Below are positions 5,933 through 26,128 of a stretch of 64,000 nt of DNA, one piece after another. Under the pieces are notes generated by a model that had not been told where the DNA came from, did not search any database, and was given only the letters and a program-made list of their open reading frames with translations. The position numbers were made by a program, and so were the translations under genes. The number at the start of each line of letters is the position of its first letter. The first letter of the stretch is position 1. This stretch comes from Macrostomum lignano (taxonomy: Eukaryota). Location of the stretch: the NCBI GenBank assembly GCA_002269645.1, contig NIVC01001751.1, positions 124,001-188,000 on the forward strand, given 5' to 3'.

Positions 5933-6001
5933 GTCTCATAAGGCAGCCCTAGCGTATGCCGCAAATCCAAAAAAAGATTTTTTTACTCGTCCGTCTCGCA
6001 G

Positions 6002-6858: not shown

Positions 6859-7989
6859 CTGTCTGCGTATCCGGTGTAGCCAGGGAAATTGTCCCAGCTT
6901 TTCTCTGGCTTCCCCCCTCTTGGCTTCTGCCCGCCCTCATTCCTGCCCAGCCTAGCCCAATTTCATTCACCTGAGCCGCGTACGATTTACATTTTTGAGC
7001 AATTATTTCTATTTATTAATTTATTAAACCGTTTTTTCTGTCTATATGTTGCATATTTATCTGTTGCTTTCCCAACTCTGCTGGAACTGCGCTAAAACTG
7101 GATAAAAATAACTGACACTGTGGCGCAGTGTCCGGGTATGCCGCCTTTTAAACTAATTTATTGCATTGATCAATCAGTGTTCAAATTGCCGCGCAAAGCA
7201 CTTTGCCTCTAGAGACGTCTCACACTTTACTGTACCTTACTGATACAATCATTAATTCGCTACGAGATTAGTAGTTTCCTACAGCAATCATCGGTGTAGC
7301 AGATAATAGTAGTTGCTGGATTAGCTGAGAGCCAGTGCAGAATCTCAGATGAGATGCTAATCAAGTGTTAATTTGTAAACGCGCTCCGTTCACGCGAGCT
7401 TATGTTAAGTTTCCCTTGGATACTGTTGTCACACACAAATTAGCTGTCTAACAATAATTTCATATATTCTACATTCATTTCCCTCGGCCAAGCAGTGCTT
7501 ATTGCATTCGTGATATAATTAATCAGTTATCTTTCTGTCACAAAACCTATTCTGGCCTGGAAGAGCTCTACAAACCGGTTCGGTCTATGGTGTTCTACTT
7601 TTTAAGCCCCCCCCGTTTTTGCACCCTTAGATAAACTTTCAACTTTTTTGTCTCCAGCTTCAGCCATTGCTAAATATTTTGCTGACAAGGCCGCCTGCTG
7701 ACAATGGACAATATTAGCGCTGGTCAATTTGAAACACTATGCAAAGAGACTTTGTTGCCATCAAATGCTGAATGCTGAATATATATTAATAATAATAATT
7801 GATGTGCTATTTTTGTTTGAAACAGCTTAGTGAATTTTAATTGGCTCATCAATCAATCATTTAAACTAAAATGTTTTCTTTTTAAACGATGGTTTGAATA
7901 TTAATTTACACAATACTAATGGTAGCAGTTTAGTAGGGTAAGTGGCTTTCATGACCCTAAATAAAAACTTAGTCTTGATAAAAAGATTT

Positions 7990-8603
7990 CCGCTGCAATT
8001 ATTGAGGCCAGCCAGTCTGTTGTTCTCTTGTAGGAGAGCAGTGAGGTGCAAATGTCTGCTCGGCTTTGACGGTCCCTGTCAGTCAGGTCATGGGGGGTCC
8101 ACTGTCCGAGCTTGCTTTTCTTGCCCATGGCAGCCAGGTGTTCAGCGACTTGCACATGGGAGCACCCGAGAGTGGCTGCCAACTCTCGTGTAGTCTGGTG
8201 CGGATTGGCCTCCACAAGTGTTCGCAGCAGCTCAGTGTCTATCTCAGATGGGCGTCCAGGGCGAGGTTCGTCAGCAAGGCTGTAGTCGCCGCTGCGAAAG
8301 CGATCAAACCAACGACGGGCTGTGCGGTCAGAGACAGCATCCTGGCCAAATGCACTGCACAGGCGTCGAGTCGATTCGGCTGCTGTAATACCTGCTAGAA
8401 AATCATATAGCATGCACTGCCTTAGAGCGATGCTGTTTAATTCAAAATTTCTGGCCATAATTGGGCGCTGAAAAGCAAATGACTTGGTTAGAATGACCAC
8501 AACTCTGGCTGTATATGCATACACAAGTATTGGATCCAACACAGCTTCATGATCCTCTGCATAGAAAAATAAAAAAACGGACAGAACTTTCCTAACAACC
8601 CAA
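7990..8603 (-). mobile_element. 3'-truncated mariner transposon (left TIR plus DNA-binding half of transposase)
   Basis: On the minus strand TA|TTGGGTTGTTAGGAAAGTTCTGTCCG, a mariner-type TIR. ATG at 8458 gives HTH region RRWFDRFRSGD..PRPGRP and WTPHDL (WVPHEL motif). Similarity stops near the first catalytic Asp; no right TIR found. Confidence 0.85.
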
Positions 8604-9287
8604 TAGTTAAAATCCAATACACTAAGTAGTATTACCGGTATATCTGGATCGAAAATTGGAGCCATTTAAAAGCTCGTTTTATTACAAGTTGTTTTAATCA
8701 AGCGTCTGCAGAGACAGTAAAGGATTTGCAGTAGAATAGCTCGTGCTAAAATGAAGCTAAGAGATGTTTTCAAACGTAACGATAATTTCGTTCTCGTTAC
8801 CTTTGAAAACACGCTTGGTAATTCCTATGTAGTTGAAGTTCAATTAATAAGAGCGCATAATGAAGTTTAAGTACAGACAGGGAGTAAATTGCGCAGGATA
8901 GTACTAATAGTAGCCAGTGCCCTCAGAAATGAATATAATCATCCAGTAAGGTCAGGGAATATCAGGAAGAGGACAATGGGACAGCAGTAGGCATTTGTAC
9001 AGTATAAATTGTACTCACAGAATTATTGTCAGGTGCAAATGAAGGTCAGCAGACTTTCAGAGCAAGAGATTATAAAAGACTGAAATTGAGCGCACACTGG
9101 TATCAGCGTGAGGTGATGACAAAAAGTAAAGTTTAGACTTATCAGTTAGGGCTGACGAGGAGGCTGGAGGTGTATATGGCTATATATACTCGTATATATA
9201 TTAATCATTAAAGTTTCTCTACACTCTATTGCTACTATGAGTAGACATAATCAGATACTGATTGCCCGCAGAGTAGTAGTTAACCAT

Positions 9288-9716
9288 TTAAGGCGTAGAC
9301 CGGCCCTGGTCGCAGGCAGCCAGCATGTTCTTAACAAACTGGATAGCGCTATCGAACTGGGTCCAGAAGTAGCACTCGGCGCCCATTCTCAGGGCCAATC
9401 GCTCGCCATAGACGTCGCGCACGTACTCGAGCTGGCTGAGCAGGGCTGGCGGGTTGGCTTTGATAATAACGAATACAAATGCGGGCAGCAGATCGTCGGC
9501 GCTAAGCGGCCGCTCGCAGGACAAATAGAGCAGCCGGCTGAGCAGGTCGTAGGCCCGGCGCACGCAGGCCACCTTGTCGCGGGCCAGCTTGAATACGGGC
9601 AGCAGGCGGAGCTGCTCCTGGGCTGGCAGCCAGGGACAGCCGGAGTGGAAGGCGCGCGGAATGCGCAGCAGCCGGTGATTGGGCGACAGGTCGCGGCCCA
9701 GTTCGTCCATGGCTCG
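9288..9716 (-). CDS. GAPVD1: GAPVD1 last exon (VPS9 Rab5-GEF domain)
   Basis: Acceptor cacacag|CGA. Motifs SADDLLPAFVFVIIKANPP and YFWTQFDSAIQFV. 429 nt including TAA. Confidence 0.92.
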   Translation of the reverse strand, partial: RAMDELGRDLSPNHRLLRIPRAFHSGCPWLPAQEQLRLLPVFKLARDKVACVRRAYDLLSRLLYLSCERPLSADDLLPAFVFVIIKANPPALLSQLEYVRDVYGERLALRMGAECYFWTQFDSAIQFVKNMLAACDQGRSTP

Positions 9717-9774
9717 CTGTGTGCGGCAAGTGAGGGGAACTCGCTTTATTTGTTGGACTGAGAGTGAAACTCGG

Positions 9775-9816
9775 AGTGACGAGTGACAGGGTGGGATTGA
9801 GAGCGACAAGGATGAG

Positions 9817-9877
<61 letters not shown>

Positions 9878-10415
9878 GATGTTGGGAGTGACAAGGGTGA
9901 GATTGAGAGTGTCAAGGATGATATTGGGAGTGACAAGGGTGAGATTGAGAGTGTCAAGGATGATATTGGGAGTGACAAGGGTGAGATTGAGAGTGACAAG
10001 GTGGGATTTGAGTGACAAGGGTGGAGTTTAGAGTGACAAGGGGAGACTGTGAGTGATACAGTCATGGCTCTCGAGTTTAGAGTGACAAGGGGAGACTGTG
10101 AGTGATAACGAGACTGAGAGTGACAAGGGTGATGTTGGGAGTGACAAGGGTGAGATTGAGAGTGACAAGGTGGGATTGGAGTGACAAGGGTGGAGTTTAG
10201 AGTGACAAGGGGAGACTGAGAGTGACAAGGGTGGATTTTAGAATGACAAGGGTGAGATTGAGAGTAACAAGGTGGGATTGGAGTGACAAGGGTGATATTG
10301 GGAGTGACAAGGTGGGATTGGAGTGACAAGGGTGAGACTCGGAGTGACAAGGATAAGACTGGGAGTGACAAGGGTGAGACTCGGAGTGACAAGCATGAGA
10401 CTGGGAGTGACAAGC
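9775..10415. repeat. Compound intronic minisatellite (GAGTGACAAGGGTG core) with a (GA)n tract
   Basis: Repeated gagtgacaag core; (GA)n at about 9820-9873. Fills the last GAPVD1 intron. Confidence 0.9.
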
Positions 10416-10488
10416 GTCAGCAGTGAGAAGTGCCAAGAGGTGCAGTGGCAGCAGGCATTAAAGCGGCCAGCATGGAGCCAACTCTCAC

Positions 10489-12594
10489 CCGGAACACCTC
10501 GTCCCGCTCCTGCATGACGCGCATGTCGTTAGAGCCGCTCAGGTAGGCATAGACCTCCGGGTAGCTCACTAGCCAGCGCTCAATATAATCGTAGGACTGC
10601 TGCAGCAGGTCGCCAGCTGGCGAGTCCTCCTCGGAGTTGGCCGCGGCCGCCACTGACGAGTCCTGCTGATCGAATCCTAGGCCGACAGACCGGCTCCAGT
10701 TGAGCCTGGCGCACAGGTGAGCCACGAGTTTCTGGGTCTCTTCGCATTTCTCGTCAGCAGAATTGCACTGACGCAGCGTGGCCTGCAGGCTGCGCACCTC
10801 GTGCTCGTCCGAGCGCTTTAAGAAGGCGCGCAGCTCGCACAGCAGCAACTGTTGAAAGGCCAGGCGGCGGGAGTGTCGCAGGCGGCGAAGCGCGTGCTCG
10901 GCTCGGTCCCGCCTGGCGGCCAGGGCGTGCCGCGTGTTCACCAGGTAGGCGGCGTACACGGCCCGCTGCTTCAGGTCGCGCCGCATCGACAGCAGCAGCC
11001 GCTTCAAGGCGTGCGCGTCGAACGGGGCCAGCAGGGCCAACAGGTCGGCCAGGGCGGCAGCCAGCTGGTCCAGGCCCAGTTCGGCCGCCTCGGCCAGTTG
11101 GCGCCTCAACAGGTCGGCGACACCGCCGCTAGCCGCGCCGGAGTCGAAGCCGCCGGGCGGCAGCAGGCGGAACTCCGAGCTGGTGAGGGCAGAGCGCAGC
11201 CGCCGCTTGGCCTCGGCGAAGGCCGGGCTGTCCTCCGGATTGCTTGGATCGAAAAACGGCGGCGCGGCTGTCCCGCCCTCCGCCTGGGAGGACTCGGCGC
11301 CGGTCGCACCGTCGGCGGCGTCTTCGGCGTCAGCGGCGGCAGCGGGCGCCGGCGACCCGGTTGAGTTGTTGGCCGCAGCGGCAGAGGCCGTGGCTGGCCC
11401 GGCCGGCGGCCTTCGGGCAGTTTTGTATTTTGTGAACACCAGGTCAGCGGCCGACAGTGGAGTCGCTGCCGCGGCGGCCGGCGAGGCAGTCACCGCTGGG
11501 GACGCCGCCGATTCTGATTCAACGGCGCCGCTGGAGCCGCCACCGCCTCCGACGATGCCGCCAGACTTGGCGGCCGCGTTCAGCAGCGTCTTCTTGGCTA
11601 GCGGCTTCTTCAGCTTGCCAGCCGGACCGGCCGGCCGGGATAGTCGGCCGCCGCCGCCGCTGCCGATCGCGCCGCCGGTGCCTCCGCCCGGCTCGCTGCC
11701 GGTGTCGCTGGCCCCGATGCCGGCAGCTGCGGCTTCGACTGGGCCGGCGTGGTCGTCTTGCGATCGGCGCCGATTGGCGGCTGCCGCGGCTGCGTTGGCT
11801 GCGGCCGCCGCGGCTGCGCCAACCTTAGCGGCCGACACGCTGCTGCTGCAGTTGCTGGCCGTCTCGTCGAAATCCTCGCCAAGCCGCTCCGAATATTTGT
11901 CGTCGGCCTCGCTGGCTGGCACTTCAATCGAGAACTTGTCGTCGGTGTCCAGCATCAGGTCGCGCGCCGTGGCGTCCCTGTCGCCTTCGCTGTCAATCAC
12001 CGACGTAGACCATTGATCGTCGGGGCGTTCAACAGGCGACATGTCCCGCTGCGGGGGCGGAATGTCGAACTTGTTGAATCGCTCGGTGACGTCTTTGCCG
12101 CTGCTGCCGTCTGGCAGGGCGTCTAGCGGACTGTCCCGGCCGCTGATGCTGGGCGTACCGCGGCCGCTGACGTTGGCGGAGACCAGACTCTCGTCCTCCT
12201 CGTCCATCTCCACTGACGGCGCGCTGTGCGTGGAGGCCACCTCCGAGATGGCGGTCTCGCTGACAATCTCCAGACAGTCTCCGCCGCTGCCGCCACCCCC
12301 ACCGCCGCCGCCGCCACCGGCGCCTCCGCCTTGATGACTGCCAGATGTTGAGCCGCCGCCTTCGGAGTCGCCGCCGAGTCCGCTAAGTGAAAACCGGGTC
12401 TTCTTCTCGTTGCCGCCGCTGCCGCCGCTGCCACCGCCGCCGCCGCCCCTAGTGTAGGAAGACTCCTCTGGCGCGAAGATTGACACCCTGGCTCGCTTGC
12501 TGGCCTTCTCCAACACCCGGTCCTCGGGCAGCAGGCCGGGACAGTCGGCCGGCGGGTCCAGCTGGAGCACCAGGACGTCGCGGGACTGCCGGAT
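10489..12594 (-). CDS. GAPVD1: GAPVD1 large central exon
   Basis: 2106 nt, phase 0/0. Acceptor taacag|ATC (IRQSRDVLVL..CPGLLPEDRVL), AYLVNTR region, donor CGG|gtgaga. Confidence 0.9.
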
Positions 12595-12826
12595 CTGTTA
12601 ATGAGGAATGAGGAAATGTTAAATGTTTACTAATAGTAGAATATCCTATTCTTCAAAGTTTAGACAGACCTAACGGAACCTTAGGTACCTAAGCTTTATC
12701 AATAAGACCACGATAAAGTTCACAATGTCCCGTCTATAAAGAGAACACAGGATCCGTTTGTACTTATTTTTTCTTAGTTTGAAGCATAGCACTATACATG
12801 AGCTATGGAAGTACATCAAGCCCTAC

Positions 12827-13730
12827 CATCTCCTGCCCGGAGTCCGGAGCGCACAGCGACTCCGTAGAGCCAGTCAGAGGCGAGTGGACCCCAATGCCGC
12901 CGCCTCCGCTGCCAAAGTTGCCGAGCAATGACGTCACCTGCCGGCGGCGATGCACAGAAGGCGACGAGCTCGACGCTGGCGAGTGCGACAGCGCCGCCTC
13001 GGCCCTCGGCGTTGAAGAGGCCGAGCCGACATTGTGAGCTGGCGATGCGGCTGCGGCCGTCGAGAAAGAGCCGGTGGCGTTGGCAGCGGAGCGACCCGGC
13101 ACGGACTCGGGCAGGTCGGCCAGACAGGCCTCCAGTCTGCGTCGCTGCTGCGATGCGGCCGCACTGGCTGCGGCAGCCGCCCCCGCTCCGTCGTCCTGCT
13201 GGCCGGAGCCGACGGCAACGCGGCAGGCCCGGACAAGCAGGTCCAGATCGTCCGGCGTGACAGCCAGGCTGCTCAGCTGGAGCTGCTGGTGCTGCTGCTG
13301 CGGCTGCAGGCCGGAAACTGGCCCGCTGAGCCCGGCGCCGATCCGCAGCAGCGAGTCCAGCCAGCCAGTCAGACAGTCCGGCTCGAACTGGCCAAATATC
13401 TCCGGGCTGAATACGCGCGAGTCCAGCGAGCCGCCCTGGCACAATGCCTCGAGTACCTGGCCCATCTGCATGAGGTTGTTCCGCTGGATGTAGTTGATAG
13501 CCACGCTGCCAACTATGCCGCTGTGCTCGGGGTCGAGCAGGGCCGGGATCAGGTAGTGCTGAAACACCAGGTGGCCGCAGAGGGAGCGCGCTGCCGCAGG
13601 CGACATTCGACTGTTGGGCCGGCCGCTGGCCTGCCGGTAGAGGCCGCTCAGCAACCAGAGGAACGGTCGGGGGAAGGCGCGCGTGTTCTCGCGGAGCTCG
13701 TCTATGAACAGGCGGGCCAGGCGGGCCACT
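12827..13730 (-). CDS. GAPVD1: GAPVD1 RasGAP-like domain exon
   Basis: Acceptor tttcag|A. Motifs ENTRAFPRPFLWLL, YLIPALLDPEHSGIV, NNLMQMGQVL. Donor ATG|gtaggg. Confidence 0.9.
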
Positions 13731-13809
13731 CTGAAATATGGAAAGCAGAGCTCGTGCGGGTTTGCCGGCCGCAGTCAGTTTGCAGCTTAGGTTAAGTCAC
13801 AAATTTTAC

Positions 13810-13910
13810 CTATCGGCCATCTGCTTGCGGTAGTCGCGCACGCACAGCTCGAACTGCTCGCTGCCCTCCTTCCCAAACATGTGCTCGCGTCGGTCCCGGC
13901 AGAACCGGTC
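13810..13910 (-). CDS. GAPVD1: GAPVD1 internal exon (DRFCRDRREHMFGKEGSEQF...)
   Basis: 101 nt, acceptor ccgcag|GAC, donor AG|gtaaaa. Matches the LFGEKGS segment of homologues, and phases agree with neighbouring exons. Confidence 0.85.
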
Positions 13911-13929
13911 CTGCGGCAGGGTTGAATGG

Positions 13930-15738
13930 TAGGGGTAGACGGTAGGGTAGACAGTAGGGTAGACAGAGTAGACAGTAGAATGACAGGGTAGACAGTAGGG
14001 TAGACAGGGTCGACAGTAGAATGACAGGGTAGACAGTAGGTTAGACAGGGTAGACAGTAGGATGACAGGGCAGACAGTAGGATGACAGGGTAGACAGTAG
14101 AATGACAGGGTAGACAGTAGGATGACAGGGCAGACAGTAGAATGACAGGGTAGACAGTAGGATGACAGGGTAGACAGTAGAATGACAGGGTAGACAGTAG
14201 GGTAGACAGGGTAGACAGTAGGGTAGACAGAGTAGACAGTAGAATGACAGGGCAGACAGTAGGATGACAGGGTAGACAGTAGAATGACAGGGTAGACAGT
14301 AGAATGACAGGGTAGACAGTAGGATGACAGGGCAGACAGTAGAATGACAGGGTAGACAGTAGGATGACAGGGTAGACAGTAGAATGACAGGGTAAACAGT
14401 AGAATGACAGGGTAGACAGTAGAATGACAGGGTAGACAGAAGAATGACAGGGTAGACAGTAGAATGACAGGGTAGACAGAAGAATGACAAGGTAGACAGT
14501 AGAATGACAGGGTAGACAGTAGGATGACAGGTTAGACAGTAGAATGACAGGGTAGACAGTAGGATGACAGGGTAGACAGTAGAATGACAGGGTAGACAGT
14601 AGAATGACAGGGTAGACAGAAGAATGACAGGGTAGACAGTAGAATGACAGGGTAGACAGTAGAATGACAGGGTAGACAGTAGGATGACAGGATAGACAGT
14701 AGAATGACAGGGTAGACAGTAGAATGACAGGGTAGACAGTAGAATGACAGGGTAGACAGTAGAATGACAGGGTAGACAGTAGAATGACAGGGTAGACAGT
14801 AGAATGACAGGGTAGACAGTAGAATGACAGGGTAGACAGTAGAATGACAGGGTAGAGAGTAGGATGACAGGGTAGACAGTAGAATGACAGGGTAGACAGT
14901 AGGATGACAGGGTAGACAGTAGAATGACAGGGTAGACAGTAGGATGACAGGGTAGACAGTAGGATGACAGGGTAGACAGTAGAATGACAGGGTAGACAGT
15001 AGGATGACAGGGTAGACAGTAGAATGACAGGGTAGACAGTAGAATGACAGGGTAGACAGTAGAATGACAGGGTAGACAGTAGAATGACAGGGTAGACAGT
15101 AGAATGACAGGGTAGACAGTAGAATGACAGGGTAGACAGTAGGATGACAGGGTAGAGAGTAGGATGACAGGGTAGACAGTAGAATGACAGGGTAGACAGT
15201 AGAATGACAGGGTAGACAGTAGAATGACAGGGTAGAGAGTAGGATGACAGGGTAGACAGTAGAATGACAGGGTAGACAGTAGAATGACAGGGTAGAGAGT
15301 AGGATGACAGGGTATACAGTAGAATGACAGGGTAGACAGTAGAATGACAGGGTAGACAGTAGAATGACAGGGTAGAGAGTAGGATGACAGGGTAGACAGT
15401 AGGATGACAGGGTAGACAGTAGAATGACAGGGTAGACAGTAGGATGACAGGGTAGAGAGTAGAATGACAGGGTAGACAGTAGAATGACAGGGTAGACAGT
15501 AGAATGACAGGGTAGACAGTAGAATGACAGGGTAGAGAGTAGGATGACAGGGTAGACAGTAGAATGACAGGGTAGAGAGTAGAATGACAGGGTAGACAGT
15601 AGAATGACAGGGTAGACAGTAGAATGACAGGGTAGAGAGTAGGATGACAGGGTAGACAGTAGAATGACAGGGCAGACAGTAGGATGACAGGGTAGACAGT
15701 AGGATGACAGGGTAGACAGTAGAATGACAGGGTAGAGA
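13930..15738. repeat. 20-bp intronic minisatellite (GTAGACAGTAGAATGACAGG), about 90 copies
   Basis: Strict 20-bp periodicity; ends about 20 nt from the acceptor at 13911. Confidence 0.97.
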
Positions 15739-15804
15739 CAACTGGCAATAATAGCCAGTAGAAGCCACAGGCAAGCGACAAGATCGGCCTATACCGGCAG
15801 TTAC

Positions 15805-15993
15805 CTGCACAGCCTTGTTGAGATCCAGATCCAAGAAGACATCGTTGAACTCCGCCAGCAGGGTGTGAATCGGCCGGCGCAGGGTCTGCACCAGAAAGCC
15901 GCCAGCGCCGGCGTCCAGGCTGAGGCGGAGCAGTCGGACAAAAGTGGCCGTGCCGCGAGACAACAGCTTGACGGGATTGTCCAGCGGCAGGAC
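15805..15993 (-). CDS. GAPVD1: GAPVD1 internal exon (VLPLDNPVKLLSRG...)
   Basis: 189 nt, acceptor actcag|GTC, donor CAG|gtaact. Matches DNPRRLLRRG of homologues. Confidence 0.87.
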
Positions 15994-16090
15994 CTGAGTA
16001 TGAGACAGGGGTTGGCAAAGATTTTTGAGTCACTTTATGTCCCTTACATTTGACTATTAGATAAATAACCATAAATCCCAGGATTTTAAT

Positions 16091-16407
16091 ATAATAATAA
16101 TAATAATAATTTATTCACACCTGCCCTAATTGGGCCAGGTGTGCAACCGACAGCTCAGCTGCTATTTGCGCGGCGCATCTGAAGGCTGCGTACGGCTGTT
16201 CAGTCCAAGGACTGGGGGGGGGGGGTCGCTACACACAGCCTCAATTACCCCAGCTAATGCTGGCACCCATTTTACAGCTGGGTGAACTGAAGCAGTGTAG
16301 AGTTAAGTGTCTTGATCGAGGACACAAACTGTTCCAGTGGGATCGGGAATCGAACCCCCGACCTTCAAGTCGTGAGTCCGTTGCTCTAACCACTAGGCTA
16401 CAACAGA
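16091..16407 (-). mobile_element. tRNA-derived SINE with CORE-like central domain and (ATT)n tail
   Basis: Minus strand has A box TAGCCTAGTGGTTAGAGC, B box GGTTCGATTCC, then TGTGTCCTCGATCAAGACACTTAACTC...CACCCAGCTGTAAATGGG (resembles the MIR/CORE domain) and an (ATT)n tail. A second copy lies at 26673. Confidence 0.8.
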
Positions 16408-16482
16408 GTAATAAATATCCATCAATAAATCACTCAGACTTAACAGGAAGGGCCAGTGAGTTCTCGCTAACTGAGCACCAAC

Positions 16483-17034
16483 CTGAATCTCCATCAGGCG
16501 CATCAGAGTCTGATAGCAGGCCTCCTCGGACGATTCGGCCAGGCAGTGGCCGAACAGGCAGGCGAAGACGCACTGCAGCAGTCTGGGCAGGCAGCCGCCG
16601 CTGCCGGGCGGGTCGTTGGTGCAGTCGGTGTCAGCGAGAGGCCGCCGCTCAACAGTGAGCAGCACGTGAGCCAGCAGGTCCGGGCTGGTTCGCAGCAGCC
16701 TGAGCAGGTCGGCGTACTTGTGCTCGTGACAGGTGAGCAGAGAGTAGGCATCGCGATAGCGCAGCTCGGCGTCCAAAGCGGCGGCGAAGCGAGCCAAATC
16801 CACGCAGCCTGTAGCGGCCGAGGCTGTGGCAGCTTCGCGGGTGAGCAGTCGCTGCTGCAGGTGCAAACGGAAGCCTTCGTGCAGTATTCTACGAGAGGCG
16901 TCGCTCAGCTGATCAAACAGCTGCCTGATGAGATCCTTCTCGCAGCAGACAAAGAGGCGCTCCTGGCGCAGCTGCTGGTGCAGACTGGCCAACTCGTCAG
17001 CCAGCGCCGGGGTCTGTTGAGCGTCTTGCTGAGG
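16483..17034 (-). CDS. GAPVD1: GAPVD1 5'-most recognisable coding exon (no ATG at its 5' end)
   Basis: 552 nt, phase 0. Acceptor ccccgcag|CCT. LASLHQQLRQERLFVCCEK matches the N-terminal LAHHLKQERLYV motif. Donor CAG|gttggt. Confidence 0.88.
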
Positions 17035-17256
17035 CTGCGGGGTGGCCGGACAAATTATTAATATTAATTACTGAGGTAAAACAACAGGTCTAAGCTCCAT
17101 AGATATTCAGATCAGGGAACACGGAGCGGGAGACATGGAAGTGACACTCCCACGCAAATTCAAGATGCCAAATTGAAATCCAGGATGCCAGCTGGCATTA
17201 ACCAAAAAGTTCAATCCCTACCCTTTACATTGCTGAGCATCCAGCACTGCGTTCTG

Positions 17257-17738
17257 CAGGCTCGATTCCAAGTGCAGTCACATTAATTTGGAGCCAAATT
17301 GGAATCTCTGCTCGTGCAATTAACGGCCTTGAGGGCCAACCCCACAAGGCTCAGTGAAGTGTACATGCCTAACTGTGAGCGTGTGCCTGTGCGTATGACT
17401 GCGTACGTATCCGCGCCATGGATGAAGGAATAGAAAGGATCGCTCATCTGAAAGCGAGTCTACGGCCAAGACTTCCTAAATATTGGGATATTCCCCCCAT
17501 GAATTTCATTGGCTGCTGGAATTTAATAATAGTACCCTCCCCCCCCCAAGTTCTTACTGGCTGAAGCTTGTACGCCGGTTTCAGATGAGCGAGCCTTTCT
17601 ATTGCTTCATCCATGATCCACGCGCTTGTGTGCCTGCTCAGGGGAGTTGGCGGAATGGGCAGCAATGCCTCTCGCCGGTTGTGTGCCTGCTCAGGGGAGT
17701 TGGCGGAATGGGCAGTAATGCCTCTCGCCGGTTGTGTG
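17257..17738. mobile_element. Dispersed repeat, copy 1 (inverted relative to 62331-62593), interrupted by a MITE
   Basis: Reverse-complement similarity to 62331-62593, plus a local 50-bp tandem duplication at about 17626-17725. Confidence 0.8.
17417..17615. mobile_element. 199-bp MITE with about 37-bp TIRs and 8-bp TSD (hAT-like)
   Basis: TIR CATGGATGAAG(G/C)AATAGAAAGG(A/C)TCGCTCATCTGAAA. TSD ATCCGCGC/ATCCACGC. Empty site present at 62392-62399. Confidence 0.85.
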
Positions 17739-18574
17739 CCTGCAGCCCCCTGACTCTATAGCATAGTACAGAGCCTCTCTGACCCACAGAGGGTTGCAGA
17801 AGTTTGCAGACTCCATGCTCACAGATTGCTCAAAGCTGACAACCGATAGAGGTCCAGAAACACCAAGAACCCCAATAAATATAAAACTATTAGCACTACA
17901 AATGAAATATGAACCAGATTTGACATTTGACATACAAGGATCCAAATTCATAATGCCAAAATGAAAGTTCCCCTAAATCGAATTCGGTGTAAATAAAAAA
18001 ATAAAAGCAGAAATTTGTGCTACACAAATAAATTTCCAATAAGCGTTTGTTGTCGTATTTTCGAATTTAATTCAGCCAAGGAATAATAAAAAATATAGTA
18101 TTACGAGCATATAGCATTAATTATAAGCAGTGTCAGGCCGAAACGCTTAGTATTTCATAACAAAAATACTGTGCAAGCATCGCATTAAAAAAATATGAAA
18201 ATCGGGGGTTATAAAGGAAGCAGTCAGCTCTTTCTCTTGTCGCTCACTGTATACGAGAAGCATCCGTTTTGGCAAATAACAGAGCAGTATGTACTGTGAA
18301 ACAGCTCGGCGCAGAATAGGAGTTTTTCTATCAATATAGGGATATAAAAATACCGTACATTGAACACAGTGCTACTGCAACACTGACGGCATCATATTGC
18401 ATAGAGAAAAGACAGAACAATAGACTGGATACATACTGCCGCTTGCAGAGATAGAAATCAAAATCACACTTCTTTTTTCATTTTAAGCTAGATTTAATGC
18501 GTAATTAATAAAAATTTACGCCCAATATTACTATTAGTAATAGAATAGTAGTCTATCGGTGTGATCAATCACTG

Positions 18575-19400
18575 TGAGAGATTGGGAGTGGCTGGGTGAG
18601 ACTGAGAGAGATTGGGAGAGTGACTGGGTGAGACTGAGAGAGATTGGGAGAGTGACTGGGTGAGACTGGGAGAGATTGGGAGAGTGACTGGGTGAGACTG
18701 AAATATTGGGAGAGTGACTGGGTAAGACTGAGAGAGATTAGAGAGAGTGACTGGGGGAGTCTGAGAGACATTGGGAGAGTGACTGGGTGAGACAGAGAGA
18801 CTGGGAGAGTGACTGGGTGAGACTGATAGAGATTGGGAGAGTGACTGGGTGAGACTGAGAGAGATTAGAGAGAGTGACTGGGGGAGTCTGAGAGAGATTG
18901 GGAGAGTGACTGGGTAAGACTGAGAGAGATTAGAGAGAGTGACTGGGGGAGTCTGAGAGACATTGGGAGAGTGACTGGGTGAGACAGAGAGACTGGGAGA
19001 GTGACTGGGTGAGACTGATAGAGATTGGGAGAGTGACTGGGTGAGACTGAGAGAGATTAGAGAGAGTGACTGGGGGAGTCTGAGAGAGATTGGGAGAGTG
19101 ACAGGGGTGAGACTGAGAGAGATTGGGAGAGTGACTGGGTGAGACTGAGAGAGATTAGAGAGAGTGACTGGGGGAGTCTGAGAGAGATTGGGAGAGTGAC
19201 TGGGTGAGACTGAGAGAGATTGGGAGAGTGACTGGGTGAGACTGAGAGAGATTAGAGAGAGTGACTGGGGGAGTCTGAGAGACATTGGGAGAGTGACTGG
19301 GTGAGACAGAGAGACTGGGAGAGTGACTGGGTGAGACTGATAGAGATTGGGAGAGTGACTGGGTGAGACCGAGAGAGACTGGGAGAGTGACTGGGTGAGA
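18575..19400. repeat. Minisatellite (GAGAGTGACTGGGTGAGACT core) between STAMBP and GAPVD1
   Basis: Repeated gagagtgactgggtgagactgagagagatt units. Confidence 0.93.
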
Positions 19401-19597
19401 TTAAGATTAAGGCTCTACAAGAGTCTCTAGCCCAAAATGCTTGAGTACATCTGGATAGCTAGCAAATCAGTATCCGTTAGAATTGATCGAACTCAGCAGG
19501 TTAAGCCATTCAGAGTTAGGCTTCAACAACACCGATATGTGTTGAAACAAACTATTCCGAAGGCAACACAATCCAAACGGAGCAGGCCCAGATGTAT

Positions 19598-20411
19598 TCA
19601 GCGCAAATCGTGCACCTTAAGATCGCCCTCGGGCGCATCAATGGCGTGCTTGGCCCGCTCAAACAGGGGCGGATGCTCCTGATGCGGGTGGAAGCCCTTG
19701 CCAGAGCAGCGGCTGAGATAGTCCAGGCCGTGCTGGGTCAGGGTGAACGTAGCCGTGTCGCCGAATTTCGGCGCGCACACAACGGCAACAGCTTCGGGCA
19801 GCATGAGCTGATAGGACAGGTGAGTGTGCAGGTCGATGCTAGATAGGAAAGCAGTCTGAGTAGGGTGCGTGTGCACCCAGCCGAGGGTGACCAGGTCGAA
19901 CCTGTCCAGCACGCCGAAGATCTCCTCCTCGCCGCTGGTGGTGCAGGAGTCCGAAGTTCCGCTCTGCTTCGGCAGCACCAAATCTGTGACGGCCAGGGCG
20001 CCGTCTCTCACTGAGCCGCAGAGAATGCCGCAGGTCTCCTTATTAGCGGCGGTGTTGCTGTCGGCCAGGCGGAGAAATCTCAGCCCGAGCTGGGCCGGCA
20101 GCACCAGAGTGCGCAGCGAACCAACGCCCGAATGGCTGCCCCAGCTGCTGTCAGAGAGGCCGAAGTCCTCCGACAGGCTGGGCGGTGCTATGGTCGACGA
20201 GGACGCATCGGCACCGCTGTACGGCGGCGGCGGCGCGCTCGGTTCAACAGGCGGCAGGATCTCCTCGGCCTGTTTGGCAGCAACGGCATTCGCCCTGGCG
20301 GCCTCGGCAGCTTCGGCTTCGGCCTTGGCTTTGGCGTGCTCGGCGGCGAACTGGTCTAACAGGAGGCGCTTGATGCGCTCGGCCTCGCTTAGAGCGGTTT
20401 TGCATTCGAGC
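19598..20411 (-). CDS. STAMBP: STAMBP/AMSH exon 2 (JAMM/MPN+ deubiquitinase domain)
   Basis: Acceptor ttgctcag|G. Motifs NKETCGIL and GWVHTHPTQTAFLSSIDLHTH (JAMM HxH..D), C-terminal Zn-loop GFHPH. Spliced protein about 360 aa. Confidence 0.94.
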
Positions 20412-20872
20412 CTGAGCAAGGAGCAAAGTTTTTGTCTTCTTTTTGAACAAGATTTTTTCATCTACTCGTAAAAGGACTTGAGTGCACATCTGCGCATAAG
20501 CTACTTTCAGTTCAGTAGGCAGTTCAAATAGAAGCATTTTAACGTATTTTAAGACGAGACTCATTTATTGGCCCTCTTAGCACCGCCCCCCCGCTGAATT
20601 TTATTGCCCATATCAGAGTGGCAGCCTAAAGCTGGCATGTACATTCTCAGTGGCTCTGGCTGGTAAATGTACATTACGGCTGCACCAATAGCCAGTTGTG
20701 TTGGCGTCTGCTAGTCACTCCAACTGCCTGTCTTTTCATAGAATAGCTTATGCATTCTGCCTTGCTACTGAGCTGAAAGTAGAGACAGTTTTAGCAAGCC
20801 AGTGTGCCCGAGTGGCCCATCCAGTTATTAGTGTGCTCGGGATACTCTAATTAAGCACTCGTGCATTGAAGG

Positions 20873-23800
20873 GCCTGAGAGAACATTGGGTAGCCTGAAA
20901 GAACACTGGGGAGCCTGAGAGAACATTGGGTAGCCTGAGAGAATATTGGGTAGCCTGAGAGAATATTGGGTAGCCTGAGAGAACACTGGAGAACCTGAGA
21001 GAACACTGGAATGCCTGAGAGAACATTGGGTAGCCTGAAAGAACACTGGGGAGCCTGAGAGAACATTGGGTAGCCTGAGAGAACACTGGAGAGCCTGAGA
21101 GAACATTGGGTAGCCTGAGAGAACATTGGGTAGCCTGAAAGAACACTGGGGAGCCTGAGAGAACATTGGGTAGCCTGAGAGAACACTGGATAGCCTGAGA
21201 GAACATTGGGTAGACTGAGAGAACATTGGGTAGACTGAGAGAACACTGGAGAGCCTGAGAGAACATTGGGTAGCCTGAGAGAACATTGGGTAGCCTGAGA
21301 GAATATTGGGTAGTCTGAAAGAACACTGGAGAACCTGAGAGAACACTGGAATGCCTGAGAGAACATTGGGTAGCCTGAGAGAACACTGGATAGCCTGAGA
21401 GAACATTGGGTAGCCTGAGAGAACACTGGGTAGACTGAGAGAACACTGGAGAGCCTGAGAGAACATTGGGTAGCCTGAGAGAATATTGGGTAGCCTGAGA
21501 GAATATTGGGTAGTCTGAAAGAACACTGGAGAACCTGAGAGAACACTGGAATGCCTGAGAGAACATTGGGTAGCCTGAGAGAACACTGGGTAGCCTGAGA
21601 GAACATTGGGTAGCCTGAGAGAACACTGGAGAACCTGAGAGAACACTGGAATGCCTGAGAGAACATTGGGTAGCCTGAAAGAACACTGGGGAGCCTGAGA
21701 GAACATTGGGTAGCCTGAGAGAACACTGGATAGCCTGGGAGAACATTGGGTAGTCTGAAAGAACACTGGAGAACCTGAGAGAACACTGGAATGCCTGAGA
21801 GAACACTGGGTAGCCTGAGAGAACACTGGGTAGCCTGAGAGAACACTGGGTAGCCTGAGAGAATATTGGGTAGTCTGAAAGAACACTGGAGAACCTGAGA
21901 GAACACTGGAATGCCTGAGAGAACACTGGGTAGCCTGAGAGAACACTGGGTAGCCTGAGAGAACATTGGGTAGCCTGAGAGAACACAGGGTAGCCTGAGA
22001 GAACACTGGATAGCCTGAGAGAACATTGGGTAGTCTGAGAGAACACGGGAGAGCCTGAGAGAACATTGGGTAGCCTGAGAGAACACTGGGTAGCCTGAGA
22101 GAACACAGGAGAGCCTGAGAGAACATTGGGTAGCCTGAGAGAACACTGGAGAGCCTGAGAGAACACTGGAGAGCCTGAGAGAACATTGGGTAGCCTGAGA
22201 GAACATTGGGTAGCCTGAGAGAACACTGGGTAGCCTGAGAGAACACTGGGTAGCCTGAGAGAACACTGGGTAGCCTGAGAGAACACTGGGTAGCCTGAGA
22301 GAACACTGGGTAGCCTGAGAGAACACAGGAGAGCCTGAGAGAACATTGGGTAGCCTGAGAGAACACTGGAGAGCCTGAGAGAACACTGGAGAGCCTGAGA
22401 GAACATTGGGTAGCCTGAGAGAACATTGGGTAGCCTGAGAGAACACTGGGTAGCCTGAGAGAACATTGGGTAGCCTGAGAGAACACTGGGTAGCCTGAGA
22501 GAACATTGGGTAGCCTGAGAGAACACTGGAGAGCCTGAGAGAACACTGGAGAGCCTGAGAGAACATTGGGTAGCCTGAAAGAACACTGGGGAGCCTGAGA
22601 GAACATTGGGTAGCCTGAGAGAATATTGGGTAGCCTGAGAGAATATTGGGTAGCCTGAGAGAACACTGGAGAACCTGAGAGAACACTGGAATGCCTGAGA
22701 GAACATTGGGTAGCCTGAAAGAACACTGGGGAGCCTGAGAGAACATTGGGTAGCCTGAGAGAACACTGGAGAGCCTGAGAGAACATTGGGTAGCCTGAGA
22801 GAACATTGGGTAGCCTGAAAGAACACTGGGGAGCCTGAGAGAACATTGGGTAGCCTGAGAGAACACTGGATAGCCTGAGAGAACATTGGGTAGACTGAGA
22901 GAACATTGGGTAGACTGAGAGAACACTGGAGAGCCTGAGAGAACATTGGGTAGCCTGAGAGAACATTGGGTAGCCTGAGAGAATATTGGGTAGTCTGAAA
23001 GAACACTGGAGAACCTGAGAGAACACTGGAATGCCTGAGAGAACATTGGGTAGCCTGAGAGAACACTGGATAGCCTGAGAGAACATTGGGTAGCCTGAGA
23101 GAACACTGGGTAGACTGAGAGAACACTGGAGAGCCTGAGAGAACATTGGGTAGCCTGAGAGAATATTGGGTAGCCTGAGAGAATATTGGGTAGTCTGAAA
23201 GAACACTGGAGAACCTGAGAGAACACTGGAATGCCTGAGAGAACATTGGGTAGCCTGAGAGAACACTGGATAGCCTGAGAGAACATTGGGTAGCCTGAGA
23301 GAACATTGGGTAGACTGAGAGAACACTGGAGAGCCTGAGAGAACATTGGGTAGCCTGAGAGAACATTGGGTAGCCTGAGAGAATATTGGGTAGTCTGAAA
23401 GAACACTGGAGAACCTGAGAGAACACTGGAATGCCTGAGAGAACATTGGGTAGCCTGAGAGAACACTGGATAGCCTGAGAGAACATTGGGTAGCCTGAGA
23501 GAACACTGGGTAGACTGAGAGAACACTGGAGAGCCTGAGAGAACATTGGGTAGCCTGAGAGAATATTGGGTAGCCTGAGAGAATATTGGGTAGTCTGAAA
23601 GAACACTGGAGAACCTGAGAGAACACTGGAATGCCTGAGAGAACATTGGGTAGCCTGAGAGAACACTGGGTAGCCTGAGAGAACATTGGGTAGCCTGAGA
23701 GAACACTGGAGAACCTGAGAGAACACTGGAATGCCTGAGAGAACATTGGGTAGCCTGAAAGAACACTGGGGAGCCTGAGAGAACATTGGGTAGCCTGAGA

Positions 23801-26003
23801 GAACACTGGATAGCCTGGGAGAACATTGGGTAGTCTGAAAGAACACTGGAGAACCTGAGAGAACACTGGAATGCCTGAGAGAACACTGGGTAGCCTGAGA
23901 GAACATTGGGTAGCCTGAGAGAACACTGGGTAGCCTGAGAGAATATTGGGTAGTCTGAAAGAACACTGGAGAACCTGAGAGAACACTGGAATGCCTGAGA
24001 GAACACTGGGTAGCCTGAGAGAACACTGGGTAGCCTGAGAGAACATTGGGTAGCCTGAGAGAACACAGGGTAGCCTGAGAGAACACTGGATAGCCTGAGA
24101 GAACATTGGGTAGTCTGAGAGAACACGGGAGAGCCTGAGAGAACATTGGGTAGCCTGAGAGAACACTGGGTAGCCTGAGAGAACACTGGGTAGCCTGAGA
24201 GAACATTGGGTAGCCTGAGAGAACACTGGGTAGCCTGAGAGAACACTGGGTAGCCTGAGAGAACATTGGGTAGCCTGAGAGAACACTGGGTAGCCTGAGA
24301 GAACACTGGATAGCCTGAGAGAACACTGGGTAGCCTGAGAGAACACGGGAGAGCCTGAGAGAACATTGGGTAGCCTGAGAGAACACTGGGTAGCCTGAGA
24401 GAACACTGGGTAGCCTGAGAGAACATTGGGTAGCCTGAGAGAACACTGGGTAGTCTGAGAGAACACTGGGTAGCCTGAGAGAACATTGGGTAGCCTGAGA
24501 GAACACTGGGTAGTCTGAGAGAACACTGGGTAGCCTGAGAGAACACAGGGTAGCCTGAGAGAACACTGGGTAGTCTGAGAGAACACTGGGTAGTCTGAGA
24601 GAACACTGGGTAGCCTGCGAGAACACTGGGTAGCCTGAGAGAACACTGGGTAGCCTGAGAGAACACTGGATAGCCTGAGAGAACACTGGGTAGTCTGAGA
24701 GAACACTGGGTAGCCTGAGAGAACACTGGGTAGTCTGAGAGAACACTGGGTAGCCTGAGAGAACACTGGGTAGCCTGAGAGAACACTGGGTAGCCTGAGA
24801 GAACACTGGATAGCCTGAGAGAACACTGGGTAGTATGAGAGAACACTGGGTAGCCTGAGAGAACACTGGGTAGCCTGAGAGAACACTGGGTAGCCTGAGA
24901 GAACACTGGGTAGCCTGAGAGAACACGGGAGAGCCTGAGAGAACATTGGGTAGCCTGAGAGAACACTGGAGAGCCTGAGAGAACACTGGGTAGCCTGAGA
25001 GAACACTGGGTAGCCTGAGAGAACACAGGAGAGCCTGAGAGAACATTGGGTAGCCTGAGAGAACACTGGAGAGCCTGAGAGAACACTGGAGAGCCTGAGA
25101 GAACATTGGGTAGCCTGAGAGAACATTGGGTAGCCTGAGAGAACACTGGGTAGCCTGAGAGAACACTGGGTAGCCTGAGAGAACACTGGGTAGCCTGAGA
25201 GAACACTGGGTAGCCTGAGTGAACACAGGAGAGCCTGAGAGAACATTGGGTAGCCTGAGAGAACACTGGAGAGCCTGAGAGAACACTGGAGAGCCTGAGA
25301 TAACATTGGGTAGCCTGAGAGAACATTGGGTAGCCTGAGAGAACACTGGGTAGCCTGAGAGAACATTGGGTAGCCTGAGAGAACACTGGGTAGCCTGAGA
25401 GAACACTGGAGAGCCTGAGAGAACACTGGAGAGCCTGAGAGAACATTGGGTAGCCTGAGAGAACACTGGAGAGCCTGAGAGAACATTGGGTAGCCTGAGA
25501 GAACACTGGAGAGCCTGAGAGAACATTGGGTAGCCTGAGAGAACACTGGAGAGCCTGAGAGAACATTGGGTAGCCTGAGAGAACACTAGGTAGCCTGAGA
25601 GAACACTGGGTAGCCTGAGAGAACACTGGGTAGCCTGAGAGAACACGGGAGAGCCTGAGAGAACATTGGGTAGCCTGAGAGAACACTGGAGAGCCTGAGA
25701 GAACACTGGAGAGCCTGAGAGAACATTGGGTAGCCTGAGAGAACACTGGGTAGCCTGAGAGAACATTGGATAGCCTGAGAGAACACTAGGTAGCCTGAGA
25801 GAACACTGGTAGCCTGAGAGAACACTGGGTAGCCTGAGAGAACACGGGAGAGCCTGAGAGAACATTGGGTAGCCTGAGAGAACACTGGAGAGCCTGAGAG
25901 AACACTGGAGAGCCTGAGAGAACATTGGGTAGCCTGAGAGAACACTGGTAGCCTGAGAGAACACTGGGTAGCCTGAGAGAACACTGGGTAGCCTGAGAGA
26001 ACC
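20873..26003. repeat. 5.1-kb 20-bp minisatellite (GAGAGAACACTGGGTAGCCT), about 256 copies, in the STAMBP intron
   Basis: Strict 20-bp periodicity with variant units and internal block duplications. Confidence 0.98.
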
Positions 26004-26128
26004 TTATAAGAATCCGTCAATCTAGATAGTACTTTTAGGAAACTGGGAAAACATTAAAGAAATGGGAGATTTATCAATCAATAACCAAATTATTGGACTT
26101 CAGAGAAAAACCCGCATGTCGCCAATAC

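What the first reader, a model, noticed from the sequence alone, without database searches (positions are those of the whole stretch)
16483..17100. GAPVD1 lacks a genomic start codon; it may take its AUG from a trans-spliced leader
Seen: the conserved N-terminal motif begins about 14 codons after a phase-0 acceptor (ccccgcag|CCT CAG). Upstream in frame there is a TAA about 12 codons away with no ATG, and the first in-frame ATG is near the exon end, which would delete conserved sequence. By eye I found no convincing phase-0 ATG exon between here and STAMBP. Established: flatworm spliced leaders end in AUG, which can serve as the initiator. Inference: SL-AUG|CCTCAG gives MPQQDAQQ..., an N-terminus of about the normal length. 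The taxon is inferred, not shown.
Basis: partly seen in the sequence, partly recalled or inferred. Interest (0 to 1): 0.8.

Follow-up and report, generated by a model that had tools for sequence, protein, structure and literature searches.

The report
Flatworm GAPVD1 borrows its start codon

Summary
On the minus strand, the first recognisable GAPVD1 exon (17034..16483) begins at the acceptor ccccgcag|CCTCAG. An in-frame TAA lies 12 codons upstream with no ATG in between. The first in-frame genomic ATG is codon 178, well past conserved N-terminal sequence.

The window is GenBank contig NIVC01001751.1 of the Macrostomum lignano Mlig_3_7 assembly, so the guessed taxon is right. The M. lignano spliced leader ends in ATG, and 45% of its conserved genes are SL trans-spliced.

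The deposited annotation of this locus and of two paralogous copies gives a 5'-partial GAPVD1 CDS. It has no Met and no upstream exon, and it starts 0-3 nt downstream of this AG. That is what a pipeline that trims the SL and cuts transcripts at SL sites produces.

SL-ATG|CCTCAG is in frame and gives MPQQDAQQ..., an N-terminus at the long end of the orthologue range. Candidate cis ATG exons upstream are no better than chance, and several lie in repeats.

No SL-containing read could be examined, so the support is indirect.

The mechanism was described for Schistosoma by Cheng et al. 2006. This is a new instance of a known kind. Confidence about 0.8, interest low to moderate.

The parts
16483..17034 (-). 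First coding exon of GAPVD1 (184 codons, phase 0 to phase 0). It encodes PQQDAQQTPALADELASLHQQLRQERLF... and has no in-frame ATG until codons 178 and 181.
   Evidence: It is 100% identical to residues 1-184 of PAA62231.1. The junction to exon 2 (15993..15804) was confirmed against the orthologues and the deposited proteins.
17035..17056 (-). 3' splice site used as the SL trans-splice acceptor (inferred): pyrimidine-rich tract tttgtccggccaccccgcag ending in AG at 17036-17035. This is the end of the outron.
   Evidence: The deposited CDSs of three genomic copies begin 0-3 nt after this AG. Two older, independent gene models also use this acceptor. It matches the enriched trans-acceptor motif [T/C]TNCAG at 5 of 6 positions (CCGCAG); that motif is present at only 44% of sites.
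17068..17070 (-). In-frame TAA 12 codons upstream of the exon. It closes the reading frame in the genomic sequence.
   Evidence: It is conserved in all four copies.
17086..17100 (-). Nearest upstream ATG, in frame (ATGGAGCTTAGACCT, followed by GTTGTT). In the genome it opens a 10-codon ORF that ends at the TAA. It is the rival 'mini-exon' with a 51-nt intron, but most likely it is just outron sequence.
   Evidence: The donor CCT|GTTGTT scores 0.5 of 5.5. No deposited model uses it. One copy has ATGCAG instead of ATGGAG.
9288..17031 (-). Deposited GenBank CDS for this locus: BOX15_Mlig015927g1, PAA64431.1, 1425 aa, 'partial'. It starts QQDAQQ (second codon after the acceptor) and ends ...DQGRSTP*.
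   Evidence: Pfam finds RasGAP and VPS9.
16492..16503 (-). The first two in-frame genomic ATGs (16503-16501 and 16494-16492). Starting here would delete about 177 residues, including conserved N-terminal sequence.
17002..17004 (-). In-frame CTG in a good context (GCGCTGG). This is the site of the rival non-AUG initiation reading. It aligns one residue from the human initiator Met.
17035..19597 (-). Outron or intergenic space between the STAMBP stop and the GAPVD1 acceptor (2563 nt). It contains a 32-nt-unit minisatellite (18571-19400), a dispersed repeat (17257-17743) with a 199-nt MITE-like insert (17417-17615), and an AT-rich stretch (17744-18570, 36% GC).
19598..26382 (-). Upstream same-strand neighbour STAMBP/AMSH (BOX15_Mlig001162g1, PAA64432.1, 355 aa, two coding exons). 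A cryptic donor AAG|GTGCAC (exon end 19616) was joined to the GAPVD1 acceptor in older models.

Best explanation
The GAPVD1 pre-mRNA of Macrostomum lignano is SL trans-spliced at the acceptor 17035|17034. Everything upstream is an outron that is discarded, including the in-frame TAA and the short MELRPVVLPQ* ORF.

The 35-nt leader ends in AUG. Joining it to CCUCAG gives a mature mRNA in which the leader AUG (nt 33-35) is the first AUG and is in frame with the whole GAPVD1 ORF. The protein therefore starts MPQQDAQQTPALADELASLHQQLRQERLF.... The gene carries no initiator codon of its own, so making the protein depends on trans-splicing.

Shown here: the anatomy, the taxon, the leader sequence, the frame, and the deposited transcript models that start at the acceptor.

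Inferred: that SL reads really map to this site, and that the ribosome starts at the leader AUG.
For: 1. The window equals Mlig_3_7 contig NIVC01001751.1.
2. The M. lignano SL ends in ATG, and 45.3% of conserved genes are trans-spliced.
3. Three independent genomic copies carry deposited 5'-partial CDSs without Met and without any upstream exon. Two start exactly at the first codon after the AG and one starts a codon later. A 5'-partial ORF can begin there only if the transcript model itself begins within 0-3 nt of the acceptor, because the in-frame TAA lies 33 nt upstream. The pipeline trims the SL and cuts transcripts at SL-read peaks.
4. The SL AUG is in frame and open. The next AUG is out of frame (mRNA nt 319, an 82-codon dead-end ORF). 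The next in-frame AUG is codon 178.
5. Orthologues have 8-21 residues before the L..L..E(R/K)L motif. The SL-AUG start gives 22, one more than the longest orthologue examined.
6. There are 61 phase-compatible ATG...|GT candidates in the 2.56 kb upstream, against 38 +/- 12 in shuffles. The best donor score of 3 is reached by 95% of shuffles. The two candidates with GT[AG]AG donors lie in a MITE-like repeat or in 36%-GC non-coding-looking sequence.
7. Initiation at the flatworm SL AUG has been shown experimentally: Cheng et al. 2006, cited in PMC9851317 and PMC12582326.
Against: No SL-containing read, cDNA or peptide for this gene was seen; the support from the annotation is indirect.

In this particular copy the deposited CDS starts one codon after the acceptor (17031, not 17034), so the transcript end is not placed to the nucleotide.

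The acceptor (CCGCAG) lacks the T of the enriched [T/C]TNCAG motif.

The leader AUG sits in a weak Kozak context (U at -3, C at +4).

Real cis donors in these genes are degenerate (GTTGGT, GTAACT, GTAAAA, GTAGGG, GTATTG), and a 79-nt intron exists. A weak-donor mini-exon therefore cannot be excluded from sequence alone.

The four genomic copies are nearly identical upstream, so conservation gives no discrimination.
Confidence: 0.8

Rival explanations
1. Cis mini-exon. Transcription starts just upstream, and the ATG at 17100 opens a 5-codon first coding exon (ATGGAGCTTAGACCT). This is spliced through a 51-nt intron (17085..17035, GTTGTT...CGCAG) to the same acceptor, giving MELRP|PQQDAQQ....
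For: The ATG is the nearest one upstream, it is in frame, and a GT lies in phase 0 before the TAA. Donors in this gene are degenerate; exon 1's own donor is GTTGGT. Short introns exist, for example 79 nt at about 13806..13728. The ATG is present in all four copies.
Against: The donor CCT|GTTGTT scores 0.5 of 5.5 and lacks the GT[G/A]AG found at 65% of M. lignano donors. I estimate a 7-10% chance of an in-frame ATG plus a phase-0 GT within 10 codons. None of the three deposited RNA-seq-guided models contains this junction, although the aligner used can detect 51-nt introns. One copy has a non-synonymous change in the 5-codon 'exon'.
Confidence: 0.06
2. Another cis first exon with an in-frame ATG lies further upstream (17101..19597 or beyond) and was missed by the annotation. 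Examples are 17614..17558 (CCA|GTAAG) and 17951..17823 (TCT|GTGAG).
For: Two candidates have consensus-like GT[AG]AG donors. Short ATG-bearing first exons are common in animal genes.
Against: The candidates are no more numerous or better than in shuffled sequence. 17614..17558 lies inside a 199-nt MITE-like element with 40-nt inverted ends, within a dispersed repeat. 17951..17823 lies in 36%-GC sequence, unlike the 64%-GC exons. The deposited models of three copies have no upstream exon. The same-strand STAMBP gene limits the space.
Confidence: 0.05
3. Non-AUG initiation. Whatever the 5' end is, translation starts at a near-cognate codon inside exon 1, most plausibly the CUG at 17004-17002 (GCGCUGG). 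That would give an N-terminus of almost exactly the human length.
For: The CUG has G at -3 and G at +4, and it aligns one residue from the human initiator Met. The leader AUG has a weak context.
Against: If the mRNA is trans-spliced, a scanning ribosome meets the in-frame leader AUG first, and that AUG has been shown to initiate in flatworms. Near-cognate starts are rare and inefficient. The two readings are not exclusive: both would yield functional protein.
Confidence: 0.04
4. Read-through fusion. GAPVD1 exon 1 is cis-spliced to the cryptic donor AAG|GTGCAC five codons before the STAMBP stop (exon end 19616). This would give an in-frame STAMBP-GAPVD1 fusion protein, as in UniProt A0A1I8JQ11 and A0A1I8IYU6.
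For: Two older models from two loci use exactly this junction, and it is in frame, phase 0 to phase 0. The donor is no worse than real donors here. An open trans-splice acceptor can capture upstream donors in a polycistronic precursor.
Against: Those models carry frameshifts, intron read-through and truncated ends, which is typical of ab initio prediction on an error-rich early assembly. A gene finder with no ATG available is forced into such a join. The later RNA-seq-guided annotation separates the genes and gives them different transcriptional-unit names.
Confidence: 0.05

Closest known systems
[quoted passage not shown]
   Same: A flatworm SL ending in AUG is trans-spliced in frame onto an exon that has no genomic initiator upstream of conserved sequence. 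The leader AUG is the first AUG of the mRNA.
   Different: The species and leader sequence differ (M. lignano, a free-living macrostomorph). For this gene neither the trans-spliced cDNA nor translation from the leader AUG has been shown experimentally. I found no systematic survey of SL-AUG-dependent ORFs in M. lignano; PMC8629364 does not address it.
slORFs: open reading frames created by SL addition (slORFfinder, PMC9851317)
   Same: The ORF exists only in the trans-spliced mRNA, and its start codon is supplied by the leader.
   Different: Most slORFs reported there are new or alternative ORFs from NUG codons in nematode, ascidian or euglenozoan leaders. Here the leader AUG opens the canonical, conserved protein.
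Downstream genes of SL-resolved operons (C. elegans SL2 genes; M. lignano operons, PMC8629364)
   Same: There is a same-strand upstream neighbour (STAMBP), an acceptor with no cis donor, and both genes act in endosomal sorting.
   Different: The gap is 2563 nt, or about 1.2 kb after removing the repeats I could identify. The usual gap is about 100 nt, and the authors' cut-off is 1 kb. The deposited names put the two genes in different transcriptional units. Operon membership is not established.
Animal GAPVD1 / GAPex-5 / RME-6
   Same: An N-terminal RasGAP-like region and a C-terminal VPS9 domain. The N-terminal helix motif L..L..ERLFV..E is conserved.
   Different: The orthologues examined start with their own Met 8-21 residues before the motif. 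The M. lignano gene encodes no Met there.

Membership tests
SL trans-spliced genes of Macrostomum lignano | The organism has an SL RNA, and the locus belongs to that organism. | tested here: met
   The window has 0 mismatches over 27,031 nt to GCA_002269645.1 NIVC01001751.1. The SL sequence and the SL RNA gene are described in PMC8629364.
SL trans-spliced genes of Macrostomum lignano | [quoted passage not shown] | tested here: met
   The acceptor is ccggccaccccgcag|CCT. No upstream donor/ATG exon scores above chance. The deposited models of three copies start at the acceptor and have no upstream exon. The enriched motif [T/C]TNCAG, which is present at 44% of sites and is not obligatory, is matched at 5 of 6 positions.
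SL trans-spliced genes of Macrostomum lignano | RNA reads or cDNAs carrying the leader joined to the exon. | not testable with these tools
   No M. lignano RNA-seq data or genome-browser SL track could be reached. The junction pattern was absent from metagenome contigs, as expected. The supplements of PMC5730564, PMC5816591 and PMC5173321 do not list the gene.
ORFs initiated at the flatworm SL 3'-terminal AUG (Cheng et al. 2006 class) | The leader AUG is in frame with the conserved ORF, with no stop in between. | tested here: met
   SL+exon translates as MPQQDAQQTPALADELASLHQQLRQERLFV... and stays open through exons 1-2.
ORFs initiated at the flatworm SL 3'-terminal AUG (Cheng et al. 2006 class) | No genomic in-frame AUG upstream of conserved N-terminal sequence; use of the next AUG would truncate the protein. 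| tested here: met
   There is a TAA 12 codons upstream and no ATG between it and the exon. The first in-frame ATG is codon 178. The conserved motif starts at codon 16-20.
ORFs initiated at the flatworm SL 3'-terminal AUG (Cheng et al. 2006 class) | Translation shown to start at the leader AUG (N-terminal peptide, reporter or ribosome profiling). | not testable with these tools
   This needs experiment.
GAPVD1 / RME-6 | RasGAP-related domain plus C-terminal VPS9 domain in one protein. | tested here: met
   Pfam RasGAP 6e-08 (12803-13729) and VPS9 7.8e-19 (9288-9809). Both are in the single deposited 1425-aa product.
M. lignano operon (downstream gene) | Repeat-adjusted distance below 1 kb to a same-strand upstream gene (criterion of PMC8629364). 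| tested here: inconclusive
   The distance from stop to acceptor is 2563 nt. Subtracting the 830-nt minisatellite and the 487-nt dispersed repeat leaves about 1.25 kb, still including the unknown STAMBP 3'UTR. No repeat library was available.
M. lignano operon (downstream gene) | Both genes lie in one annotated transcriptional unit. | tested here: not met
   STAMBP is Mlig001162g1/Mlig002293g1 and GAPVD1 is Mlig015927g1/Mlig011836g2,g3. The authors note that units break in repeat-rich spacers, so this is weak evidence against.

The most novel reading that the evidence does not exclude
STAMBP (AMSH) and GAPVD1, two endosomal-sorting genes, are co-transcribed as a repeat-inflated operon. Besides SL trans-splicing, the open acceptor at 17035|17034 is sometimes cis-spliced to the in-frame cryptic donor at 19616, which would give a deubiquitinase-Rab5-regulator fusion isoform. 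Under this reading GAPVD1 would have lost its own AUG because the leader, or the upstream ORF, always supplies one.
Probability: 0.06. Interest if true: 0.45.

Novelty: new member of a known kind. Interest (0 to 1): 0.25.

Why it matters
This gene gives a clean example in a free-living, transgenesis-capable flatworm of a conserved housekeeping gene whose translation depends entirely on trans-splicing. Three or four genomic copies all lack an initiator.

On the practical side, it explains why GenBank lists these proteins as 'partial' and why an older annotation fused the gene to STAMBP. Trimming the whole leader, ATG included, removes real start codons. SL-aware ORF calling would complete such models.

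The outron plus exon 1 could also serve as an in vivo reporter of trans-splicing in M. lignano.

It does not change what is known about the mechanism.

Tried and rejected
- A word-indexed protein search with exon 1 alone found nothing. With 412 aa it found only the two old fused models. The exhaustive HMMER search was needed to find the deposited proteins.
- Exact look-ups of P0001 and of the STAMBP last-exon ORF found no contigs.
- The supplements of three M. lignano transcriptome papers do not mention GAPVD1 or STAMBP, and no paper pairs Macrostomum with GAPVD1.
- There is no SL RNA gene or SL-like sequence in the window, and no Rfam or tRNA hits.
- The SL-exon junction is absent from metagenome contigs.
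- Donor-consensus scoring was dropped as a discriminator after I saw that the five real donors in these genes all miss GT[G/A]AG.
- Conservation among copies is uninformative: there are only 6 single-copy differences in the 461 aligned nt, all of them upstream of the acceptor.
- I checked DLIC as a possible second SL-AUG case and rejected it. Its first visible acceptor is phase 2, out of frame with a leader ATG, and its deposited CDS starts beyond the window.
- I rejected the idea that the 'partial' label alone is evidence. What counts is that the ORF runs to the transcript's 5' end at the AG.

Full report
**What is at the coordinates.** The feature is on the minus strand. Read 5'->3', the sequence is ...ATGGAGCTTAGACCTGTTGTTTTACCTCAGTAATTAATATTAATAATTTGTCCGGCCACCCCGCAG|CCTCAGCAAGACGCTCAACAG.... 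The frame reads MELRPVVLPQ*LILIICPATPQ|PQQDAQQTPALADELASLHQQLRQERLFVCCEKDLIRQL... and stays open to the donor ATTCAG|gttggt at 16483|16482. The exon is 17034..16483: 552 nt, phase 0 at both ends. The in-frame TAA is at 17070-17068, with no ATG between it and the exon. The first in-frame ATGs inside the exon are 16503-16501 and 16494-16492, six and three codons before its end. GC content jumps from 41% in the 66 nt upstream to 64% in the exon.

**What the gene is.** Downstream ORF pieces on the same strand carry a RasGAP domain (12803-13729) and a VPS9 domain (9288-9809). An exhaustive HMMER search with exons 1-2 retrieves animal GAPVD1 proteins at 1e-16 to 1e-10, aligned from their residues 3-17 onward. 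Upstream on the same strand is STAMBP/AMSH (USP8_dimer and JAB domains; stop at 19600-19598). The only room for a cis first exon is therefore 17035..19597.

**Which organism.**
- A protein search returned two Macrostomum lignano UniProt models at 89-93% identity.
- The HMMER search returned a 100%-identical protein that is GenBank PAA62231.1.
- Fetching the encoding contigs showed that window 1..27031 is identical, with 0 mismatches, to Mlig_3_7 contig NIVC01001751.1 (window coordinate + 124000).

**Does this organism have an AUG-ending leader?** Yes. M. lignano has a single 35-nt SL, CGGTCTCTTACTGCGAAGACTCAATTTATTGCATG. About 30% of its genes and 45.3% of genes with a human homologue are SL trans-spliced. 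The enriched trans-acceptor motif is [T/C]TNCAG (44% of sites), and the usual cis donor is GT[G/A]AG (65%) (PMC8629364). The Macrostomum genome paper PMC10468722 also notes that the leader probably includes the final ATG as a translation start. Initiation at the flatworm leader AUG was shown by Cheng et al. 2006. In S. mansoni more than 40 cDNAs need it (as summarised in PMC9851317 and PMC12582326).

**Evidence that this acceptor is a trans-splice site.** I could not reach RNA reads, but the deposited annotation is informative.
- The Mlig_3_7 transcript models were built from RNA-seq with StringTie/TACO. The TBONE pipeline then cut them at peaks of SL-containing reads after trimming the leader, and ORFs were called with TransDecoder (PMC5730564).
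- Three genomic copies of this gene are annotated: NIVC01001751.1 (this window, BOX15_Mlig015927g1, PAA64431.1), NIVC01001960.1 (Mlig011836g2) and NIVC01002658.1 (Mlig011836g3).
- All three are 'partial', none starts with Met, and none has an upstream exon.
- Two begin PQQDAQQ, exactly at the first codon after cag|. The window's own copy begins QQDAQQ, one codon later.
- An in-frame TAA lies 33 nt upstream, so a 5'-partial ORF can begin there only if the transcript model itself starts 0-3 nt downstream of the AG.

A transcript 5' end that falls on a polypyrimidine-AG acceptor at a composition boundary, in three copies, is the signature of a trimmed leader. It does not look like a promoter-defined start. 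A cis-spliced upstream exon would have been joined through junction reads.

**The predicted mRNA.** SL + exon 1 reads ...UUAUUGCAUG|CCUCAG.... The leader AUG is the first AUG, is in frame, and opens MPQQDAQQTPALADELASLHQQLRQERLFV.... The next AUG (nt 319) is out of frame and opens an 82-codon dead end. The next in-frame AUG is codon 178. Nine orthologue N-termini carry 8-21 residues before the invariant L..L..E motif. The leader-AUG start gives 22, just past the longest of them.

**Cis alternatives.** I enumerated every ATG followed, without a stop, by a phase-0 GT between 17035 and 19597.
- There are 61 candidates, against 38 +/- 12 in block shuffles.
- The best donor score is 3 of 5.5, which 95% of shuffles reach.
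- The two candidates with GT[AG]AG donors are poorly placed. 17614..17558 is inside a 199-nt MITE-like element (40-nt inverted ends at 17417-17456 and 17576-17615), which itself sits in a dispersed repeat with a second copy at 62331-62593. 17951..17823 is in 36%-GC sequence that does not look coding.
- The candidate nearest the exon deserves mention: ATGGAGCTTAGACCT|GTTGTT...(51 nt)...CGCAG|CCT is in frame and would give MELRP|PQQ.... Real donors in these genes are degenerate (CAG|GTTGGT, CAG|GTAACT, TAG|GTAAAA, ATG|GTAGGG, AAG|GTATTG), and a 79-nt intron exists. I therefore cannot exclude it from sequence alone. Its donor is very poor, though, the configuration is expected by chance in roughly 7-10% of cases, and no deposited model uses it.
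- The four copies differ at only six positions, all within the 385 nt upstream of the acceptor, so conservation does not help.

**Other rivals.**
- An in-frame CUG at 17004-17002 in a good context aligns next to the human Met. It could start translation, but in a trans-spliced mRNA the leader AUG comes first.
- Two older UniProt models (A0A1I8JQ11, A0A1I8IYU6) join STAMBP ...APEGDLK (cryptic donor AAG|GTGCAC, exon end 19616) in frame to PQQDAQQ. They independently pick the same acceptor. However, they carry frameshifts, retained intron sequence and truncated ends, and they look like a gene finder's way out of a missing ATG.

**Operon question.** STAMBP and GAPVD1 are same-strand neighbours, and both act at endosomes. 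The spacer is 2563 nt. Removing the 830-nt minisatellite (18571-19400) and the 487-nt dispersed repeat leaves about 1.25 kb, still including the unknown STAMBP 3'UTR. That is close to, but above, the 1-kb repeat-adjusted cut-off of PMC8629364. The deposited names place the two genes in different transcriptional units. The question is left undecided, and it does not affect the main conclusion.

**Comparison with what is known, and novelty.** This works like the S. mansoni SL-AUG-dependent mRNAs of Cheng et al. 2006, and it meets every sequence-level criterion of that class: leader AUG in frame, open, and no genomic AUG before conserved sequence. The two experimental criteria (an SL-bearing cDNA, and a protein N-terminus) are untested. 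I found no paper that names this gene or surveys SL-AUG-dependent ORFs in M. lignano. It is therefore a new member of a known kind, already implicit in a public '5'-partial' annotation.

**Verdict.** About 0.9 of that is that the site is trans-spliced, and about 0.9 that the leader AUG is then the initiator. Interest is low to moderate (0.25). The inference from raw sequence was correct and useful for annotation, but a specialist would not be surprised.

Noticed in passing
window 26379-26426 (minus strand): The deposited STAMBP CDS (PAA64432.1, 'partial') starts at 26382 (GCC, then ATG at 26379). That is 2 nt after an AG at 26386-26385, not at the genomic ATG at 26397. A much better acceptor (catttcag|) lies at 26426-26419. 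If STAMBP is SL trans-spliced at 26385|26384, the leader AUG is out of frame and opens a 12-codon uORF (MPPWSRSSDFAA*) that overlaps the real, strong-context AUG (GCCGCCAUGG).
   Followed up: partly
window 19614-19621 and 17034 (minus strand): Two older UniProt models (A0A1I8JQ11, A0A1I8IYU6) fuse STAMBP to GAPVD1 in frame, through a cryptic donor AAG|GTGCAC five codons before the STAMBP stop. This is probably an ab initio artefact of the missing ATG, though it might reflect low-level read-through splicing.
   Followed up: partly
window 17257-17743, with 17417-17615; second copy at 62331-62593: A dispersed repeat in the GAPVD1 outron carries a 199-nt MITE-like insertion with 40-nt, 93%-complementary terminal inverted repeats. 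A copy lacking the insertion lies near the GPCR gene at 62.3-62.6 kb.
   Followed up: partly
window 16340-16404 (minus strand), GAPVD1 intron 1: A tRNA-like sequence with clear A and B boxes (GTTGTAGCCTAGTGGTTAGAGC...GGTTCGATTCCCGATCC), probably the head of a tRNA-derived SINE. Neither ARAGORN nor Rfam calls it.
   Followed up: no
window 20828-25964; about 13950-15750; 9800-10400; 18571-19400; 30871-32734: Introns and spacers are filled with long minisatellite arrays that create spurious ORFs of up to 1700 aa. One 5-kb array makes up most of the single STAMBP intron.
   Followed up: no
window 4691-6858 (plus strand): The first visible exon of the dynein light intermediate chain gene begins at the acceptor ctgcag|G (about 4711) in phase 2, out of frame with a leader ATG. 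The deposited 563-aa CDS starts beyond the window's left end, so this neighbour has a long first intron and a conventional start.
   Followed up: partly
loci L001 (NIVC01001960.1) and L003 (NIVC01002658.1): The whole STAMBP-GAPVD1 neighbourhood is present in at least three copies in Mlig_3_7. The unique sequence is nearly identical and the minisatellite lengths differ, consistent with the known duplication and hidden polyploidy of the DV1 line. One copy (PAA62231.1) has a truncated 1109-aa model.
   Followed up: partly
window 7949-8665 (minus) and 39463-40418: ORFs that look like mariner/Tc1-type transposase fragments (HTH-like N-terminal regions). This is judged from the ORF list only and was not checked against Pfam.
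   Followed up: no
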